From NCBI GenBank assembly GCA_000388065.2, contig KB932202.1: DNA of 64,000 bases, one strand, 5' to 3'. The notes below the pieces were generated by a model. It ran no database searches, was not told the DNA's origin, and saw only the letters and a program-made list of their open reading frames with translations. Positions within the stretch are counted from its first letter, which is position 1, and each line of letters starts with the position of its first letter. Shown piece after piece: positions 37,870 to 54,817 of this stretch. This DNA comes from Fonticula alba ATCC 38817. Its lineage: Eukaryota; Protista; Nucleariida. Both the position numbers and the translations under genes were made by a program.

Positions 37870-40457
37870 ATGTCTGCCCAGATGGCTGCCGCCCCTTCGG
37901 GCGCCGAGAGCCACGACCCCCCCATGCAGGAGGTGGATACCCCTCCTCCCCCGCCCCCGCCTACGGCTCACCTGTACCAGCTGAACCTGCAGAACCAGAC
38001 GGCCGTCACTGGTGGCGGGACTCTTGGTGCCGGGGCTGCCGTGATCGGCGCCTTCTGTGGTATTGACAAGCAGAAGGTGCGCGGCCCTCCCCCCCCCCCC
38101 CCCCCCCGGGCCTCTCTACCCGCCCATAACCCGGGGAAGAGGTCCCCCTCTCTTGCGTCGGGCATTCGCCAACGCACTCGCACATGGACACCCATTGACA
38201 TACCCATGCCCCGGACACGCACACACGCACACACGTACATCCGCTCGCCCCTTTGGCCTCTGCAGGAGATTGCCCTCATCCAGCACACCGCCATTACCCT
38301 TGTGCGGGTGGACGACGAGGGCCGCATCCATGAGATGTCCCGGACCGAGATGTTCGGTGTCATCCGCAGTGCCGTGGCCTTCCACACCTACGCCAGCAAC
38401 AAGGGTGCGCCCCCCTCTCCCCTCCCCCCTGGCGGGGGGGGGGGGCCGGAGTGTCTCGCTCCCAAATCACCAGGACCATCGCTAACTCCCGCGCCCCCGG
38501 GCGCCCTGTGGCCCGAGCACAGACTTCCTGGCCATCGGCTCTGACTCGGGCAAGATCGTCATCCTCGAGTACAACCCGGTTATCAAGCAGTTCCTCACGG
38601 TGCACGAGGAGCCCTACAGCCGGACCGGCGTCCGGCGCATGGTCCCCGGGCAGCTGCTGGCTGTCGATCCCCTCGGGCGTGCCCTGCTCGTCGGTGCCCT
38701 GGATAAGCAGAAGCTTGTCTATGTGCTGAGCCGCGACCATGCCCACCGCCTGACCATCTCCTCGCCGCTGGAGGCCCATGTGCCGAACTCGGTCTGCCTG
38801 GCGGTGGTCGGCCTGGACGTTGGGACCCGGAACCCGGTGTTCGCGGCCCTGGAGTCCGAGTATGAGGACATGGACATGGACCCGAGTGGCGAGGCGGCCA
38901 GCGACCTGATCAAGGTCCTGTCGTACTACGAGCTGGACCTGGCTCTCAACCACATGGTCCGCAAGGCGCGCACTCCGATCGACGCGACTTCGCACATGCT
39001 CGTTCCCGGTATGTCGCCCTGCCGCACGCGCTGTTGGCCGTCGTCTCTCTCGCTCTCGCTCTCGCTCTCGCTCTCCTTGCTTCCCCCCTCAGCACGATCC
39101 CCTGCCCCGTCATCATCCTTCTGCTAATCCCTCCCCCCCCCCCCTCCCCGCGGCCATGTCCGGGCAGTTCCCGGTACCACCGGCTGTCCCTCGGGTGTGC
39201 TGATCTTCTCGGCGGACACGGTTGCCTGGCGCGGTGTCGGAATTGGCCCGGACACTCCGGAGCTCCGGGTTCCTCTCCCTCGGCGGAACCATCCCCTGGG
39301 TGACATTGCCCGGCCTTCGATGGTCACTTCGGCCGTGCTGATTCGCACCCGGAAGAATGTGCGTACCCTGGCCTTCTTCCTTTTCCGCCCTCCCCCTCCC
39401 ACTTGAGTCGGTCGAGCCCCGGCTGGATGGTGGCATTGACGGTATTTGCTTGGCCCTGCCCGTGCCCCGTTCGGCCGCCGCGCCTCCCTCCAGCGTCGCA
39501 TCGTGTACCTCCTCCAGTCGGACGATGGGGATCTCTTCCGCCTGATCATCGAGCTCGATCCCAAGACCGCCCAGCCGGTGGACATGGTCCTCAAGTACAT
39601 CGAGACCCTGCCCTCGGTGGCGGCATCGCTCTGCTTCCTTGAGGATGCTGGGGCCTTTTTCACGGCTTCGGAGTTCGGTGACCAGTACGTCCGGCAGCCG
39701 CTTGCGCCAGCTCCCCCTGGCCGGCCCCAAGGGCAGCCACGCCCCTGGCCACGCCCCTGGCCCTCTCTTGGCAGCTGCACTGACACCGAAACACCGCCCC
39801 CCCCCCCCCCTCCTGCACACAGCGTCGTCTACCGTCTCATCGAGTCCACCCGCGAGACTGTCGAGGAGGATCCCCTGCGCGCGAGCGACTTCACCCGGCA
39901 GTATGCCCAGTACTACCGCACGGATGCCGGGTTCGCCAACATGTCTCGGTCCTTTGGGTTTACCTCGCGCGTGGGCGCCGCCGATGCCACGGCCCTGGCC
40001 ACGGCCCAGCGCCCTCTGGCTTTCTTCACTCCCCGGGCCCCGGGCGACCTGGTCAACCTGGCGCCGGTCGACTCGGTGGCCAGCCTGTCGCCGCTGATCG
40101 ACTCCGGCATCCTGCCGGTCTCCTTCACCGACAGCTCCATCGGCCAGCATGTCCAGGCGTCCGACGGTCGGGTGATGGTCACCCTGACCGGGTCCGGCAG
40201 TGTGGGCGGTGGCGGGGCCGAGCTGCGCCTCTTGCGCGCTGGCGTGCGCTCGGTCATCGGCGACCGGGGCTCGGCGGTGGCCGAGTTCCCCGGTGTCCCG
40301 TCCGGCATTTGGGCTCTTCGCCAGCGCCCGTCCGGTGCGTTGGTCCCCTGACGGCCCCTCCCCCACCTCCCGGGGCAACACATCCGTTCTCGCTGATCCC
40401 TGGGTGTTTGGCGGCTTTCCTCCATCCTGCTCCCCCCTCCCCCTCCCCTCCCCTCCC

Positions 40458-40493
<36 letters not shown>

Positions 40494-43400
40494 ATGCACC
40501 CGCGTACTCACATGCAAATACCCCCCCCCCCCCCCCTTGCCCTCTTTGTGGCCGGTACCGGCCAAACCCACACAGACCTCTTCGATTCGTACCTGGTCCT
40601 GTCCTTCCTGAATGATACGCTGGTCCTCTCGGTGCAGAGTGCCCATGTGACGGTGGTCGAGGATGCGGCCGGGTTCCTGACCAAGGTGGCCACCATCTGC
40701 GCGGCGCACCTCGGTGGGGCCGGCCTGGCGGACCAGAGCGCCGGCCTGGTGCAGGTCCATGCCAATGGTGTGCGGCACATCCGCCCGGACAAGAGTGTCC
40801 AGGAGTGGCGCCCGCCCCCGGGCACGCAGATTGTCCATGCCATCGCCAACACCCGGCAGGTGGCCATCACCCTGAACCAGGCGTCCGGCGCCGGTGCCTC
40901 GGGGGATGATTTCGCCGAGCCCGGCGGGCCGATCGTCTATTTCGAGCTGGACCAGCATGGCCAGCTCAATGAGTACCAGCACCACAAGTCCCTGGGGGCC
41001 GAGGTGACGGCCATGGCCTTCGGCATTGTGTCCGAGGGGGCGGTCCGGTCGCCGTTCCTGATTGTCGGCACGCTGGAGGACGAGAGCGTGCGAGTGCTGT
41101 CCCTGGACCCGGATGGCTTCTTCGACACGCTCATGACCCAGGCCCTGCTGGCCCCGCCGTCGTCCATCCTGGCCACCAACTTGCAGGACCTGCCGGCTCC
41201 CGGCGCCGCGGCCCCCATCAGCGGGCAGTTCACCCTGCTCATCGGCCTGCGCAATGGCGTCCTCGTCCGGACCAACATCGACCGGCTGACCGGCATGCTG
41301 AGCAGCCCGCGCAACCGCCTGGTCGGCCACACCCCGGTCAAGCTGTCGCCCTTGACCACCAACTCCGTGCTGGACCAGAGCGCCGCCTTTGACCACTGCC
41401 GTGACGCGGTGCTGGTCCTGTCCTCCCCGGCTTCCTATGTGTGCTACTCGCACCAGGGGCGCGTCTCGGTCCTGCCGCTGACCATCGATGCCGGGGATGC
41501 TCCTGGTGCCGGGGCCGGGGCCGGGGCCGGGGCCGGGGCCACGGATGGCCCGGTGGCCGTCGACCATGCGGTCCCCTTCTCCACGGACAAGTTCCCGCGT
41601 AACTCCTTCTTCGCCATTTCCGGCCGGAAGATGCGTGTGCTGGACCTGACCCCGGCCGTGCCGGCCGTCGGGCCCGGCCTGACTGACGCCGGTGCCGGCC
41701 CCAAAACCGACACCTCAGCCGGCGAGAGTGGCCTCATTCGCGGGGCGACCTTCCACACGGCCGCTCGCGTGGCCTTGCGCTACACCCCCCGCAAGATGAG
41801 CATCTGCCCGCGGCTGGGCCTGGCCTTTGTGGGGGAGGTCGACCACCGGGCATGGGGTGTGGATGATCTGCTCGAAGCCCAGGGCCAGCCGGCTTCCTCG
41901 AAGGACACGGTGCGTCATGCCGGGCCGTGGCTCGTTGGATGGGATGCCATGCCATTGCTAGGGCAGGCCGCGGGCGCGGCCTGTCCCCGCGTGGCCTGTC
42001 TTGTCGTTTCTTTGCCCCCCCCCCCCCCCCCCCCCCCCCCCGGCCCCGGCCCCGGCCCCCTTCCGGGGCGGGGCCCGCCATTTTGATGGGCCGCCCCCCT
42101 CGCCCTCGTTGTCCTGCTGGCTAACATCGCTGCCCCGCCTCCCGTGTGCCAGTCTGCGGCATCGCTTCCGTCGGTGCGCGCGCCGGCCGGCTTCTGGGCC
42201 TCATGCCTGCGCGTGGTGGATCTGCGCCAAGCGCTGCACCTGGGCACCATGACCCCGGTGGCTCGGGGCACCCTGCCGGCCGATCAGCCCCTCACAGCCA
42301 CGACATGGGTCGAGGAGCTCGGCAACAACCAGGCCATCACCAGCATGGGCTTTGTGATGCTCCAGCCCCCGGCGCCGGTCGGCCACACGGGGCCCAACCC
42401 CAATCCCCCGGCGCCGCATGTGGTTGTCGGCACGGCGGTCAACCTGCAGCTGGCCCCGCGCAAGTGCGCCGGCGGCAAGCTCCACGTTTATGCGCTGGAT
42501 GAGACGGCCAAGACCCTAAGCCTGGTGCATACGGTGCGTGGGCCTCCTTCTATGTCTCTTTGCGCGCGCCTCCCCGCCCGCCCCTCGCTCGCCCTGCATC
42601 TCCATCTGACCCGCGACCCCGTCCTCTCCAGACCGACGTCGATGATGCGCCGACCGCCGTGTGCGGCTTCCGGGGCCGGCTGCTGGTGGGCCTTGGGCGC
42701 ACCCTGCGCCTGTATGACAATGGCCGCCGGCGGCTGCTGCGCAAGTGCGAGAACCGCAACCTGCCGAACCTCATCACGCGCATCCAGGCCCCGGAGACCC
42801 CCGGCGGCCGGGGGGACGGTGCGGATGACCGCATCATCGTGTCCGATGTCCAGGAGTCCGTCAGCCTGGTGTCCTACCTGCCGGTGCCGGAGAACCATCT
42901 GGTGGTGGTGGTCGATGACACGGTGCCCCGCTGGGCCACCGCCGTCACGGCCCTCGATCATAACACCCTCGCCGTGGGGGATAAGTTCGGCAACTTCAGC
43001 CTCCTGCGCGTGCACCACGAGTCGGTTGGCCGCATCACCAATCCCAACTGGCACCCGTCGGCCGACCGGGTGGACTTCGAGCGCGGCCTCCTCGGCGGCG
43101 CCCCCTACAAGGTATGCATTTGACGCCTCTCGAGGAGAGCCACACCGCGTCCTCCGTTGCCCACGCAGGGCCTCTCCCGCCACAGTGTTGCCCATCTGGC
43201 GCCGGTTCCTGTGCCTTCTCCCCCGCTTCCCCCCCGTCTACCCATGTGCTGACCGTGGATGCCTTCGGCTTTTCCTCCCTCCCTGGCCATCCCCCTCCCC
43301 CTCGCGCCTTCCCTTGGTGCTGTCTCCGGCTGCGGCGCTTGCAGTTCACCAACATCTGTGAATACCATGTTGGCGATATGATCACCTCCATCCATCGCGC

Positions 43401-43746
43401 CCAGCCGCACGCGGCCACCGGCGCCTCGGACGATGAGAACATCATGTACACCACCCTGCTCGGTGGAGTCGGTGTCATGGTTCCCATCCGCCGACAGACC
43501 AACATCGAATTCCTCCAGCTGCTGGAGATGCACATGCGCAATGAGGTGTCCTCCTTGATTGGCCGCTCGCACCTGGCCTACCGGTCATACTATACCCCGG
43601 TGCGCAATGTCATTGATGGCACCCTGTGCGAGCTCTTCTCCACCCTGTCCCTGGAGAAGCAGGCCGCCATCGCGGATGCCCTGAACTCCGAGGTCGACGA
43701 GATTCACACCTACCTGGAGGAGCTCCGCGTGCAGACCGGCTTCTAG
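37870..43746 (+). CDS. SF3B3: Splicing factor 3B subunit 3 (SAP130/Rse1)
   Basis: HLYQLNLQ, FGVIRS, DFLAIGSDSGKIVILEY, VHEEPYSRTGVRRMVPGQLLAVDPLGRA, LTISSPLEAH, YYELDLALNH, DSYLVLSF, RGRLLVGLG, LYDNGRRRLLRKCEN, DVQES, GDKFGN, IMYTTLLG, FLQLLEMHMR, RSYYTPVRNVIDGTLCELF. TAG 43744-43746. Confidence 0.97.
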
Positions 43747-44296: not shown

Positions 44297-44788
44297 TCAG
44301 TCGATGAGCGAGCTGCTGCTGCTGGCGACGGATTCCGCCTCGGCCGCGGTGATGAGCATGACATTGCCACGACCACCGCCGCCGGACTCGGAACCGATTT
44401 CCTCCTCGGCAGTGATCTTGAACCCGGCGGCCGAGAGCTGCCGAGCAAACTCGTCATAGTAAGTGGCCCGACCGAAGTCGATGGTGGTAATGACACGAAG
44501 CAGGGGCTTGATGGTCTCCACCAGGAAGGACCGGCGCCGCTCGAAAGTCTGCGTGAAGTAGAGCAGGCCGCCCTCCTTCAGGAGATTGGCCTTCACATGG
44601 AGCAGGGCAGCCGACGGGTCGGGCAGCAGCATGAAGGACCCACTGAAGTAGACCGCATCAAAGCGCTGGCCACCGGGCGGCAGGAAGTAATCGTAGATGG
44701 ACATATGCTCGACCTGGGGTCCGGAGCGCGCGCCGGAGAAGGGGCAGGAGGGGCAAAGGACCAGGTGTTATCCGTGCAAAGCAAGAGT

Positions 44789-44821
<33 letters not shown>

Positions 44822-45338
44822 GGGGAGAAGAACACGAGGGCGGGGGTGTCGATCTACAAGCCGGACGTACGTTCACCAGGCCCGAGGCGTTCTTGTCGCG
44901 GATGAGATCCTGCGCACGAGCAATGTAATCGGCATCGATGTCGACACCCTTGATGCGGAGTTGGCGCTCGTTGATGATAGAAATGTTGTTCAGGAGGGCA
45001 GCCGCGGTGCCTGAAATGCCGGGATGCGGCGCGTGAGGTTGGGCGTGGCGAGAGGGGAAGGGGCGAAGGCAGGAGCCACGCTCCAGAGGGGAGGAGAGGG
45101 GGGGGAGGAGGAGGAAACGCACCGACACCGACATCAAGGACGCTGGACTTGGCCGGCAACTTCTCCAACACGGTGCGGTACCACTCGGAGGTGAACCAGA
45201 CGATGGCCGCGTCATAGATGGCCGCACGAGTCCAGCGACGCCAACGGTCGAACCTGCTCGGTGACAGGGGGACAGCGGGGTGGGAAAGGGGGAATTGCGC
45301 GAATGCAAGTGTTTTGGCGCGCATGTGTGCGAGCAGGG

Positions 45339-45392
<54 letters not shown>

Positions 45393-46542
45393 GGGGGGGG
45401 GAGGGAGAGAAGGCCAAGGGGAGGAGGAAGAAAAGAGATGGGTGCTTGGTTGCCAGCGCGTCAGGTGCTTTTGTGTGATCATCTACCAGCGCGCGCCAGG
45501 ACTCCGACGGAGGGGAGGGCGGACCACAAAAAAGGCCCGCGGGAGAAGAGACCGGGCAGCCCTCGATCCAGTGCGAGGAGTGGGCAGCCCCCCGAGGGCG
45601 TCTTCCATTCTCCTGCGGCCTGTGTGTCAGCAGCATGGTGGCCGTGGCTGGCGCTGCGCGCGGGCACCCTCGTGGCTTCCCCCGCGCCGGACATTGCCAA
45701 GCGAAGCCACCAGCCGGCCCGCAGCCACGGTCTCCTCTAGCCCGCCAAGTAGGCCCGAGCAACTGCCAAAGGGTTGCTCCGGGTATCGGGCTGGGCAGGG
45801 AAAGGAGGGTGTGGGTGTGTGGAGACCTTGGCCGCTGGCCGGTGGATGGGCATCGGGACGGGGGTATGCACGTGCATGTGCGCGCGCGCGCGCGCGCGTG
45901 CGCAGACGGCCAGGCAAGCGCACAACCGGCAGTCCGCCGCCCCTCCTGGAGTACATGGCCAAAAGCTGGCTCAGACCTTTTACTGTGGACATCATGTGCG
46001 CGTGCATGGGCCGAGAGGAAGAGGGAGATCGGAGGAGCGTCGTGTAGGGAAAGCGCACAACCGGCAGTCCGCCGCCCCTCCTGGAGTACATGGCCAAAAG
46101 CTGGCTCAGACCTTTTACTGTGGACATCATGTGCGCGTGCATGGGCCGAGAGGAAGAGGGGGGGGGGGGGGNNNNNNNNNNNNNNNNNNNNNNNNNNNNN
46201 NNNNNNNNNNNNNNNNNNNNNNNNNNNNNNNNNNNNNNNNNNNNNNNNNNNNNNNNNNNNNNNNNNNNNNNNNNNNNNNNNNNNNNNNNNNNNNNNNNNN
46301 NNNNNNNNNNNNNNNNNNNNNNNNNNNNNNNNNNNNNNNNNNNNNNNNNGGAGGCGGCGGGAAGGGGGGACGCACCACTGGGGCCACGATTCGTTCTCGG
46401 GCGCGGAATAGACCCCGGCATAGGCCAGCTCACGGAGGGACTCCTTGGAGGCGTGCGGGTTGTTCGATGCCGCGACCTCGCGAGTCTCGGGCGGCAGCAG
46501 GTCCTCGGGGTACAAGTTGCTGTTGGCACCGGATTCAGCCAT
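44297..46542 (-). CDS. Class I SAM-dependent methyltransferase (unknown substrate)
   Basis: Exons 45253->45123, 45010->44871 and 44713->44297 encode motif I VLDVGVGT, IKGVDIDADY, FDAVYFSGSFMLL, LLKEGGLLYF. A probable first exon 46542->46376 (MAESG...ESWPQ, phase 2, GTGCGT donor) splices in phase to the 45253 exon (WPQW-FDRW). That link crosses an N-gap and is less certain. Confidence 0.82.
45456..46001 (-). ncRNA. Candidate intronic composite box C/D + H/ACA scaRNA-like guide RNA (U5 U41 2'-O-methyl guide; U2 psi34 guide)
   Basis: Minus strand. Box C-like ATGATGT (45995-45989), guide AGTAAAAGG-T, box D' CTGA (45974-45971). H/ACA-type hairpin 45792-45739 directly followed by box H AGAGGA (45738-45733). 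Second long hairpin 45730-45642, then ACA at about 45627-45625. C'-like GATGATCA (45483-45476) and box D CTGA (45464-45461). 4-bp terminal CGCG/CGCG stem. Lies in the sense orientation within a long intron. Not verified by covariance search. Confidence 0.6.
46026..46053 (+). other. Illumina TruSeq adapter remnant (assembly artefact)
   Basis: AGATCGGAGGAGCGTCGTGTAGGGAAAG differs at one position from the TruSeq read-2 adapter start AGATCGGAAGAGCGTCGTGTAGGGAAAG. It sits between two identical 110-bp copies (45916-46025 and 46051-46160) next to an N-gap. Confidence 0.95.
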
Positions 46543-53910: not shown

Positions 53911-53992
53911 CACCGGCGACAGGATTTGAACCTGTGCGGGCAGAGCCCATCTGATTTCGAGTCAGACTCCTTAACCACTCGGACACACCGGT
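53911..53992 (-). tRNA. tRNA-Ser(CGA), intronless, 82 nt
   Basis: ACCGGTG-TG-TCCGAGTGGTTAAGGA-G-TCTGA-CT-CGA-AA-TCAGA, long variable arm GGGC/GCCC, T arm ACAGG-TTCAAAT-CCTGT, G73 discriminator. Followed by a T-run terminator (TTTCCTTTT). Confidence 0.97.
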
Positions 53993-54149: not shown

Positions 54150-54231
54150 ACCGGTGTGTCCGAGTGGTTAAGGAGTCTGACTCGAAATCAGATGGGCTCT
54201 GCCCGCACAGGTTCAAATCCTGTCGCCGGTG
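54150..54231 (+). tRNA. tRNA-Ser(CGA), intronless, 82 nt, identical to the minus-strand copy
   Basis: Same cloverleaf; anticodon CGA at 54183-54185; TTTTT terminator at about 54238-54242. Confidence 0.97.
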
Positions 54232-54817
54232 CATTTCTTTTTGGATGCCGATCCGCGGTTCTGCCTTCCCAGCTCGGCGCGCCCGCGCGCACGCCCACAC
54301 CCCGGTTGTTTTGATTTACATTGCCGGCCGGTCTGGCGGCTCTACGGCGCTGAGCCGGGCGCATGCGCGAGCCGGGGGAGGGGGCGGCAGGGCCTTTTTT
54401 CCCCCCCCCCCCCCCCCCCCGCCTCGGGGGCGCCCCCTCCTGCTGGCACCGGGCGTGCGGCCGGCCGAGCGGGCAGGGGCATACCCCAACAGCAACCCCG
54501 GCGCTCGTCTCCCCCTCCCCCCCCCCCGGGAAGGGAACGGGCCCGGGGTAGCACGCCCGAACCGCGACCTCGGGCCGGTGTGTCCTGCCGAAGGGGGAGA
54601 CCCCACAGGAAAACAGCGCGCAGGGGGGGGGGGGGGGGGCGTCGGCAGGAATTCCCCCCCCAAACAAGGGCCAAATTCCGTCGGCACTAGGAACTATTTG
54701 AGACCCCGCGGCCGGAGCCCGGCCGGAGAGTGTGACCGACAGCCAGCACCCTTCCCCCTCTGCCGCCTTCTCTCTTCGCTTTTTGTCGGTATTTCCTCCC
54801 CTCGCAACAACGCCACA

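What the first reader, a model, noticed from the sequence alone, without database searches (positions are those of the whole stretch)
45456..46001. Candidate composite C/D + H/ACA scaRNA hidden in a 1.1-kb intron, apparently guiding both U5 and U2 snRNA modification
Seen in sequence (minus strand, 5'->3'): terminal CGCG, box C-like ATGATGT, guide, D' CTGA, an insert containing hairpin / box H (AGAGGA) / hairpin / ACA, then C'-like GATGATCA, guide, box D CTGA and a complementary CGCG. Established knowledge: a C-D' ... [H/ACA domain] ... C'-D layout is the architecture of vertebrate composite scaRNAs (U85, U87, U88, U89), which are intron-encoded and modify spliceosomal snRNAs. Inference: this about 545-nt element is one such RNA. 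It would pair a U5-Um41 guide with a U2-psi34 guide, tasks done by separate RNAs in human (U87/U88 versus U92) and, for U2 psi35, by the protein enzyme Pus7 in budding yeast. I do not know of this combination or of such an RNA in this lineage. It would also explain why this intron is several times longer than the others here. Caveats: it is long, and the second hairpin and ACA placement are not canonical.
Basis: partly seen in the sequence, partly recalled or inferred. Interest (0 to 1): 0.9.

Follow-up and report, generated by a model that had tools for sequence, protein, structure and literature searches.

The report
Long intronic guide RNA for spliceosome RNAs
An intron of a methyltransferase gene in the amoeba Fonticula alba carries a stable RNA of about 545 bases, built like the animal U87/U88 Cajal-body guide RNAs, that should direct a conserved methylation of U5 and probably also a conserved pseudouridine in U2; such RNAs have so far been described only in animals.

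Summary

**Well supported**
- **U5 guide:** box C, an antisense to U5 loop 1 and box D' sit in the exact register for Um41.
- **One folded RNA:** a significant long-range helix (z about -5) joins the D' end to the C' end across about 400 nt.
- **Expression:** two metatranscriptomes contain contigs from this element only, not from the host exons, and they end 9-24 nt inside the predicted RNA ends.
- **Shared layout:** a metagenome scan found more than 20 independent eukaryotic RNAs with the same design, including a vertebrate SCARNA6 (U88) and plant-like contigs. All have the same U5 guide, box D plus a terminal stem 230-540 nt downstream, and often the unusual C' box UGAUCA/U.

**Probable**
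- **U2 psi34 hairpin:** the first hairpin, its pocket and the H box beat all 600 shuffles of the window.

**Not supported**
- **Second hairpin and ACA box:** the second hairpin has about zero probability in the full-length fold. The sequence at its 3' end is CCACCA, not ACA.

**Caveats**
- **Intron length:** the "1.1-kb intron" is inflated by an N gap, an Illumina adapter and a 113-nt false duplicate.
- **Organism:** it is Fonticula alba, and no relatives could be fetched for covariation.

**Verdict:** a U87/U88-type scaRNA outside animals, with a new guide combination.

The parts
45456..46001 (-). Whole predicted RNA (about 546 nt), from the 5' GCGC to the 3' GCGC
   Evidence: Boxes and guides read. 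The RNA-library contigs X5 45476-45725 and 45799-45977, and X6 45465-45669, all lie inside it.
45989..45995 (-). Box C, AUGAUGU (last base deviates from RUGAUGA)
45975..45984 (-). 5' antisense element AGUAAAAGGU, complementary to U5 loop 1 (G)CCUUUUACU. The fifth base upstream of D' pairs with the second U of UUUU, which is human Um41.
   Evidence: 0.00 expected by chance. The identical element occupies the same position in Rfam SCARNA6. Chicken U87/U88 guide U5-U40 from the 5' element (PMC2653536).
45971..45974 (-). Box D', CUGA
45929..45970 (-). 5' arm of the long-range closing helix, starting directly after D'
   Evidence: Cofold energy -58.2 kcal/mol against -40.3 +/- 3.4 for shuffled arms, 0 of 500 as good. 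Its best partner in the whole intron is the 3' arm. Pair probabilities are 0.85-1.0.
45485..45527 (-). 3' arm of the closing helix, ending 3 nt before C'
45740..45796 (-). Hairpin 1, with an internal pocket. The 5' strand GAUAC (45787-45783) pairs with U2 36-40. The 3' strand UACUUGG (45751-45745) pairs with U2 27-33. U34-A35 are left unpaired.
   Evidence: pair probabilities 0.75-0.99. In one search, 0 of 600 shuffles of 128 kb gave a pocket, box and stems this good.
45733..45738 (-). H box AGAGGA (ANANNA), 15 nt after the base of the upper stem of hairpin 1
45642..45730 (-). It forms in local folds only and is followed by CCACCA, not ACA.
   Evidence: I8; z -1.97 locally. Pair probability is about 0 in the full-length ensemble, where 45735-45639 pairs with 45912-45821 instead.
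45621..45627 (-). ACACACA, the nearest ACA, 14 nt beyond the second hairpin. It is predicted to be part of the stem of a third hairpin (about 45628-45522).
45476..45481 (-). Box C', UGAUCA
   Evidence: The same variant (UGAUCA/UGAUCU) lies 10-16 nt before box D in SCARNA6 and in about half of the independent families found.
45465..45475 (-). 3' antisense element CACAAAAGCAC. Its target was not identified (it would pair with GUGCUUUUGUG).
   Evidence: no complement elsewhere in the window. It does not match the U4 A65 guide of U87.
45461..45464 (-). Box D, CUGA, followed by C-GCGC, which pairs with GCGC 46001-45998
45254..46375 (-). Host intron 1 of the methyltransferase-like gene H696_01277 (exons 46542-46376, 45253-45123, 45010-44871, 44713-44297)
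   Evidence: My four-exon model translates exactly to the annotated 284-aa protein P0121.
46026..46349 (.). Assembly artefact zone, not part of the RNA: Illumina adapter 46026-46050, false duplicate 46048-46160, N gap 46172-46349

Best explanation
The element is a single intron-encoded guide RNA of about 545 nt, of the box C/D type. It has the same architecture as the animal U87/U88 (SCARNA5/6) scaRNAs.

**How it is made and folded (inferred).** After splicing of intron 1 of H696_01277, the RNA is trimmed to the box C / box D ends. A 32-bp interrupted helix brings D' and C' together.

**U5 methylation.** The C/D' module pairs with loop 1 of U5 snRNA and directs fibrillarin to 2'-O-methylate the uridine equivalent to human Um41. 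The sequence shows the pairing and register; the methylation itself is inferred.

**U2 pseudouridylation.** An H/ACA-type hairpin (hairpin 1 plus the AGAGGA box) sits at the tip of the internal domain. It probably recruits Cbf5 and converts the U2 branch-site-region uridine equivalent to human U34 / yeast U35 into pseudouridine.

**Confidence.** About 0.8 for the C/D U5 guide as one RNA, about 0.5 for the U2 psi34 activity, and about 0.6 for the statement as a whole.
For: - **Motifs and register:**
- **Genome-wide improbability of the U5 unit:** the 14-mer is expected 0.00 times per window, and it also needs a box C at the right spacing.
- **Closing helix:** z is about -5, and its best partner in the whole intron is the arm next to C'. 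Pair probabilities are 0.85-1.0.
- **RNA libraries:** X5 holds 0.17 of 179 words of the 1.7-kb stretch but 0.57 of the 54 words of the element. X6 holds 0.10 against 0.32. All held words therefore lie in the element and none in the exons. The contigs are 100% identical to the window and end at 45977 and 45465-45476, within 9-24 nt of the predicted ends.
- **Same layout elsewhere:** 23 of 58 loci carrying the U5 guide have a terminal stem of 7 bp or more at a CUGA 230-540 nt downstream, against 3.9% with shuffled flanks. One of them is Rfam SCARNA6 at 134.7 bits. The C' variant UGAUCA/U recurs.
- **No alternative boxes:** there is no other C or D box that could close two separate C/D RNAs.
- **U2 pocket significance:**
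- **Precedent for imperfect pockets:** non-canonical pockets with extra unpaired bases work in vivo (PMC5733568).
Against: - No Rfam family matches, even at E up to 10.
- The terminal stem is only 4 bp, and box C ends in U.
- The X5 contigs leave a hole at 45726-45798, exactly over hairpin 1 and the H box. X6 covers only the 3' 205 nt. Depth is only 4-6, so this may be chance, but it would also fit processing into pieces.
- The contigs carry no strand information.
- The raw-read run gave no reads, so it was no test.
- There is no ACA at a hairpin end, no CAB box, and two unpaired guide bases lie at the top of the pocket.
- The target of the 3' guide is unknown.
- The organism's own U2 and U5 were not seen.
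- No relative was available for covariation.
Confidence: 0.6

Rival explanations
1. It is a long box C/D scaRNA only. The U5 guide is real, but the internal 400 nt is a structural insert, and the U2 psi34 'pocket' is not used, either as a relic or as a coincidence. No Cbf5 module assembles.
For: There is no ACA box at a hairpin end, and the sequence CCACCA there is confirmed by RNA-library contigs. The second hairpin has about zero probability. Neither loop has a CAB box. Part of the H box is paired in the minimum-energy fold. None of 24 other long U5-guide RNAs has a U2 psi34 pocket. The coverage hole lies over hairpin 1.
Against: The pocket, the box at 15 nt, and the 9-bp upper and 6-bp lower stems were matched by 0 of 600 shuffles of 128 kb, which is less than 1e-5 per 535 nt. 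The site is the most conserved U2 pseudouridine and is RNA-guided in animals (PMC5733568). Hairpin 1 is stable in every fold.
Confidence: 0.25
2. The intron yields two or more separate stable RNAs (a 5' piece of about 200 nt and a 3' piece of about 270 nt), made by processing or as independent units, rather than one 545-nt RNA.
For: X5 has two separate contigs with a 73-nt hole between them. X6 holds only the 3' part. Some vertebrate tandem scaRNAs are known to be processed into halves (established knowledge).
Against: There is no box D near 45799 and no box C near 45725 to cap separate C/D RNAs. The closing helix joins the two ends. Depth is only 4-6, so holes are expected. Homologous-layout RNAs elsewhere are single units closed by terminal stems of 6-8 bp.
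Confidence: 0.1
3. It is not a functional RNA. The motifs are chance matches in a GC-rich intron, and the RNA-library contigs are stable intron debris or DNA.
For: Overall folding energy is no better than shuffles. There is no Rfam hit. The contigs are unstranded.
Against: Several independent improbable features coincide. Coverage in two metatranscriptomes is confined to the element, while exons and the rest of the intron are absent. The same architecture is found in many eukaryotes.
Confidence: 0.05

Closest known systems
Vertebrate U87 and U88 scaRNAs (SCARNA5, SCARNA6; Rfam RF00478)
   Same: - Intron-encoded.
- Identical AGUAAAAGGUCUGA unit directly after box C, guiding U5 Um41.
- Box D' followed by a helix that closes a large internal domain.
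- C' of the unusual form UGAUC(U/A), followed by an 11-12 nt guide, box D and a terminal stem.
   Different: - Twice as long (545 nt against 265-294 nt).
- Not detected by the Rfam model.
- The 3' guide is not the U4 A65 guide.
- The internal domain has no ACA at the hairpin ends and no UGAG CAB box.
- Its first hairpin carries a U2 psi34 pocket, which I did not find in the SCARNA6 copy or in any other long U5-guide RNA recovered here.
SCARNA8 (U92) and Drosophila scaRNA:PsiU2-35.45
   Same: A predicted H/ACA-type pocket for the same U2 branch-site-region uridine (human 34, yeast/fly 35) (PMC5733568).
   Different: Those are free-standing two-hairpin H/ACA scaRNAs with ACA and CAB boxes. Here a single hairpin with an H/AGA-like box is embedded in a C/D RNA.
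U85 (SCARNA10), the composite C/D-H/ACA scaRNA of human and Drosophila
   Same: One RNA predicted to direct both a methylation and a pseudouridylation of spliceosomal snRNA.
   Different: U85 acts twice on U5 (Cm45 and psi46), whereas this RNA would act on U5 and U2. U85 has a complete H/ACA domain.
Pus7 (S. cerevisiae)
   Same: Makes the same U2 pseudouridine (psi35).
   Different: Pus7 is a stand-alone protein enzyme that uses no guide RNA. If the pocket here is active, this sister lineage of fungi uses the RNA-guided route.

Membership tests
Box C/D guide RNA | Box C (RUGAUGA) near the 5' end and box D (CUGA) near the 3' end, joined by a terminal stem | tested here: met
   AUGAUGU at 45995-45989 (one deviation), CUGA at 45464-45461, and a GCGC/GCGC 4-bp stem. 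The stem is weak on its own.
Box C/D guide RNA | Antisense element of 9 nt or more ending at D/D', with the target nucleotide paired to the fifth base upstream | tested here: met
   AGUAAAAGGU against the universally conserved U5 loop 1. The fifth base pairs with Um41. The organism's own U5 was not checked.
Box C/D guide RNA | Binding of fibrillarin, Nop56, Nop58 and Snu13 | not testable with these tools
   Needs immunoprecipitation.
SCARNA5/6 (U87/U88) family | Match to the Rfam covariance model | tested here: not met
   No hit at E up to 10. The model does find a vertebrate copy in L007 at 134.7 bits.
SCARNA5/6 (U87/U88) family | U5 Um41 guide in the C/D' module, and a C' UGAUCU-type box with a second guide before box D, around a large closed internal domain | tested here: met
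SCARNA5/6 (U87/U88) family | 3' guide for U4 A65 (U87) | tested here: not met
   The guide CACAAAAGCAC differs from the (A)AGUUUUCAAG of SCARNA6-type RNAs.
Composite C/D-H/ACA scaRNA / box H/ACA RNA | Hairpin-hinge-hairpin-tail fold | tested here: inconclusive
   Hairpin 1 is robust (pair probabilities 0.75-0.99). Hairpin 2 forms only in local folds and has about zero probability in the full-length fold.
Composite C/D-H/ACA scaRNA / box H/ACA RNA | H box ANANNA after hairpin 1 | tested here: met
   AGAGGA at 45738-45733.
Composite C/D-H/ACA scaRNA / box H/ACA RNA | ACA (ANA) directly after the 3' hairpin | tested here: not met
   The sequence there is CCACCA, confirmed by contigs. The nearest ACA is 14 nt further on.
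Composite C/D-H/ACA scaRNA / box H/ACA RNA | Bipartite pocket leaving U-N unpaired, 14-16 nt from the box | tested here: met
   5 + 7 bp with U2 27-33 and 36-40, and 15 nt from the upper-stem base to the H box. 0 of 600 shuffles were as good. Two guide bases (CC) stay unpaired at the top.
Composite C/D-H/ACA scaRNA / box H/ACA RNA | CAB box (UGAG) in a terminal loop | tested here: not met
   The loops of hairpins 1 and 2 have no UGAG. The only UGAG overlaps D'.
scaRNA (functional class) | Localisation in Cajal bodies | not testable with these tools
   Class membership is inferred only from the snRNA targets.

The most novel reading that the evidence does not exclude
The U87/U88-type long scaRNA is ancient. 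It is present in animals, in plants and in the fungal sister lineage, so it may date back to early eukaryotes. In Fonticula it works as a hybrid particle in which a single H/ACA-type hairpin, with no second hairpin and no ACA box, is carried by a box C/D scaffold. It makes the key U2 branch-site pseudouridine that yeasts later handed to the protein Pus7.
Probability: 0.3. Interest if true: 0.7.

Novelty: new variant of a known kind. Interest (0 to 1): 0.58.

Why it matters
- **Range of the RNA type:** in the papers I could read, composite or U87/U88-type scaRNAs are described only in animals. An Arabidopsis screen explicitly found none (PMC2685112). Arabidopsis U5 Um44 and U4 Am67 still have no assigned guide (PMC8053127). 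A member in Fonticula alba, together with the plant-like and protist contigs found here, would push this RNA type back towards the root of eukaryotes.
- **Evolution of the U2 modification:** the predicted U2 psi34 pocket bears on how the most conserved U2 modification switched between RNA-guided and protein-only synthesis in the fungal lineage.
- **Testability:** this can be tested directly in the established yeast pus7-delta assay.
- **Annotation:** it also explains why this intron is several times longer than its neighbours (112 and 157 nt).

Tried and rejected
- **Rfam.** Gathering thresholds on the whole window gave only two tRNAs. At E up to 10 on the region, only chance miRNA hits appeared.
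- **Orthologous introns.**
  - The exon-4 ORF is not on record as a protein.
  - A word-index search with the exon-4 peptide gave only bacterial methyltransferases of 64% identity or less, because of the length filter.
  - The exhaustive search found the organism's own protein alone at high identity.
  - Its 90% cluster has one member and one contig. A covariation test was therefore impossible.
- **Raw RNA reads.** Run X9, carrying the 'organism B' label, gave 0 reads, so it was no test.
- **Metagenome scan.** It found no close relative of the element; similarity never extends beyond the seed.
- **Target of the 3' guide.** There is no complement in the window. By eye it gives no convincing match to the U1, U2, U4, U5 or U6 sequences as I remember them, so that comparison is unreliable.
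- **Other ACA-anchored hairpins.** None is convincing in the internal region.
- **Whole-element folding energy.** It is not better than shuffles, so it says nothing in this GC-rich RNA.
- **Stretch laid for reads.** I deliberately left the (CA)n repeat and the exons out, so the exon1-exon2 junction was not tested with reads. It rests on the annotation and an exact protein match.

Full report
**What is in the sequence.** Read on the minus strand, the element runs as follows:
- GCGC (46001-45998)
- box C AUGAUGU (45995-45989)
- CCAC, then AGUAAAAGGU (45984-45975)
- D' CUGA (45974-45971)
- about 490 nt of GC-rich insert
- GA-UGAUCA (45483-45476)
- CACAAAAGCAC (45475-45465)
- D CUGA (45464-45461)
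- C-GCGC (45459-45456)

AGUAAAAGG(U) is the complement of the invariant U5 loop-1 sequence (G)CCUUUUACU. The fifth base upstream of D' pairs with the second U of the run, which is Um41 in human numbering. The 14-mer guide plus D' is expected 0.00 times in shuffles of the window.

**Assembly problems next to it.**
- Upstream lies an N gap (46172-46349).
- There is a 113-nt exact duplicate of 45913-46025 at 46048-46160.
- Between the two copies sits an Illumina TruSeq adapter with one mismatch (46026-46050).
- The second "box C/guide/D'" unit at 46106-46119 is therefore an artefact, and the 1122-nt intron length is inflated.
- The intron is still several times longer than introns 2 and 3 (112 and 157 nt).

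**Organism and host gene.**
- My four-exon model (46542-46376, 45253-45123, 45010-44871, 44713-44297) translates exactly to a 284-aa protein found by the exhaustive protein search.
- That protein is XP_009493443.1, H696_01277, of Fonticula alba, on scaffold KB932202.1 of GCA_000388065.2.
- It is a class I SAM-methyltransferase-like protein.
- F. alba is an amoeboid sister lineage of fungi. No snoRNA or scaRNA catalogue for it turned up in the paper library.

**Is there an RNA?**
- Two metatranscriptomes hold 31-mers of this locus. X5 (gut) holds 0.17 of the 179 words of the 1.7-kb stretch but 0.57 of the 54 words of the element. X6 (compost) holds 0.10 against 0.32. Every held word therefore lies inside the element, and none lies in the exons or the other introns.
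- Laid on the window, the X5 contigs cover 45799-45977 and 45476-45725, and the X6 contig covers 45465-45669. All are 100% identical to the window.
- The outer limits (45977 and 45465) fall 24 and 9 nt inside the predicted ends. That is expected for k-mer contigs of a short RNA at depth 4-6.
- This is good evidence for a stable RNA far more abundant than the host mRNA.
- Limits of this evidence:
  - The contigs are unstranded.
  - X5 leaves a 73-nt hole (45726-45798) over hairpin 1.
  - X6 has only the 3' part.
  - The one raw-read run gave nothing, so it was no test.

**One RNA or several?**
- The arm directly after D' (45970-45929) and the arm directly before C' (45527-45485) form a 32-bp interrupted helix.
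- Its energy is -58.2 kcal/mol, against -40.3 +/- 3.4 for shuffled arms (0 of 500 as good).
- Among all 46-nt windows of the intron, the best partner of the 5' arm is exactly the arm next to C'.
- Pair probabilities in the full-length ensemble are 0.85-1.0.
- No other C or D box exists that could cap separate C/D RNAs.
- I therefore favour one RNA (about 0.75).

**The same design elsewhere.**
- A metagenome scan for ATGATG-N3-7-AGTAAAAGGNCTGA gave 116 loci. None is a close relative of the element.
- In 23 of 58 distinct loci, a CUGA 230-540 nt downstream is followed by a stem of 7 bp or more with the 5' flank, against 3.9% with shuffled flanks.
- About half of these carry UGATCA or UGATCT 10-16 nt before that CUGA, the same unusual C' as here.
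- One of the loci (L007) is a full-length Rfam SCARNA6 (U88) at 134.7 bits. Its consensus shows the same order: box C, U5 guide, D', closing helices, two hairpins each followed by ACA, UGAUCU, guide, CUGA.
- Chicken U87/U88 are 284-294 nt, intronic, and guide U5-U40 from the 5' element (PMC2653536).
- L080 is a plant contig, with a snoR134/snoR97/U36a/Z223/Z278 cluster.
- L080 and three further plant-like loci align well. The box C/guide/D' block is conserved, and two hairpins are each followed by ACA.
- So the Fonticula RNA belongs to a widespread, apparently old class. Rfam's vertebrate model does not reach it.

**The H/ACA part.**
- Hairpin 1 (45796-45740) appears in every fold, with pair probabilities of 0.75-0.99.
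- Its pocket strands GAUAC and UACUUGG pair with U2 36-40 and 27-33, with one G-U pair. This leaves U34-A35 unpaired. AGAGGA follows 15 nt after the base of the upper stem.
- A pattern scan allowing G-U pairs finds this site as the only hit in 128 kb, against an expectation of 0.5. When stems as good as the real ones are also required (9 and 6 bp), 0 of 600 shuffles qualify, which is under 1e-5 per 535 nt.
- Even after correcting for all uridines of the snRNAs, the match remains significant.
- The site is the most conserved U2 pseudouridine. It is guided by SCARNA8 in vertebrates and by scaRNA:PsiU2-35.45 in flies, and made by Pus7 in budding yeast. Pockets with extra unpaired bases are known to work (PMC5733568).
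- Evidence against a canonical H/ACA domain:
  - In the full-length ensemble its probability is about 0. There, 45735-45639 pairs with 45912-45821 and hairpin 1 sits at the tip.
  - The sequence after the second hairpin is CCACCA, and contigs confirm it.
  - The nearest ACA is 14 nt on, inside a third predicted hairpin.
  - Neither loop has UGAG.
- Thermodynamic folds of a 70% GC RNA are weak evidence either way, and no relative was available for covariation.
- I put the U2 psi34 activity at about 0.5 and a canonical two-hairpin H/ACA domain at about 0.2.

**The 3' guide.** CACAAAAGCAC would place a methyl group on GUGC-U*-UUUGUG. It is not the U4 A65 guide of U87-type RNAs, and I found no target. 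It may be an orphan guide or may match a lineage-specific snRNA sequence.

**Comparison and novelty.**
- The RNA works like U87/U88 and shares their defining layout.
- It fails the Rfam model, lacks the ACA and CAB boxes, is twice as long, and pairs a U5 Um41 guide with a probable U2 psi34 guide. That combination is not known elsewhere and is absent from 24 other long U5-guide RNAs.
- The papers I could read describe composite scaRNAs only in animals (PMC2685112, PMC10473218, PMC3884663).
- I rate it a new variant of a known kind, with interest about 0.58. It is a solid and useful extension for snoRNA evolution, directly testable, but it is not a new principle.

Noticed in passing
window 46026-46349: The scaffold contains an Illumina TruSeq adapter (46026-50, one mismatch), flanked by a 113-nt false duplicate (46048-46160) and a 178-nt N gap. 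This is a local misassembly in GCA_000388065.2.
   Followed up: yes
L008:480-810(-), L096:5225-5530(+), L080:3140-3480(+), L014:1-300(-): Plant-like metagenome contigs carry a conserved RNA of 273-307 nt: box C, the U5 Um41-type guide, D', two hairpins each followed by ACA, then UGAUCA/UGAUAA, a guide and box D (alignment A1). L080 is a plant contig by its snoRNA cluster. Arabidopsis U5 Um44 has no assigned guide (PMC8053127), and no composite scaRNA was found in Arabidopsis in 2009 (PMC2685112). This may be the missing guide.
   Followed up: partly
L001, L002, L006, L009, L011, L012, L024, L036, L041, L052, L054, L085, L113 and others: More than 20 independent families of long (230-540 nt) box C/D RNAs carry the U5 loop-1 guide and terminal stems of 6-8 bp, in contigs of 28-70% GC from many environments. 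Only L007 (SCARNA6) is recognised by Rfam.
   Followed up: partly
L007 and L113, last 30 nt before box D: Both share the 3' guide AAGUUUUCAAG, which by my recollection is the complement of the U4 region around A65, as in U87. Other families have different 3' guides.
   Followed up: no
window 53911-53992 (-) and 54150-54232 (+): Two tRNA-Ser(CGA) genes lie head to head, 157 nt apart, with identical Rfam scores.
   Followed up: partly
window 40200-43746 (+): An SF3B3/RSE1-like splicing factor gene ends about 550 nt from the 3' end of the host gene, in convergent orientation. A spliceosome protein gene thus lies next to a spliceosomal-RNA guide, which is probably coincidence.
   Followed up: partly
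window 45340-45390 and 45880-45905: A (CA)25 microsatellite lies in the intron downstream of the RNA, and a (GC)12 tract lies inside the RNA.
   Followed up: no
host gene 44297-46542 (-): The host protein's closest homologues, apart from itself, are bacterial 200-aa methyltransferases (50-64% identity over the last exon). No eukaryotic relative appeared among the best hits, which may indicate a gene of bacterial origin that has since acquired introns.
   Followed up: no
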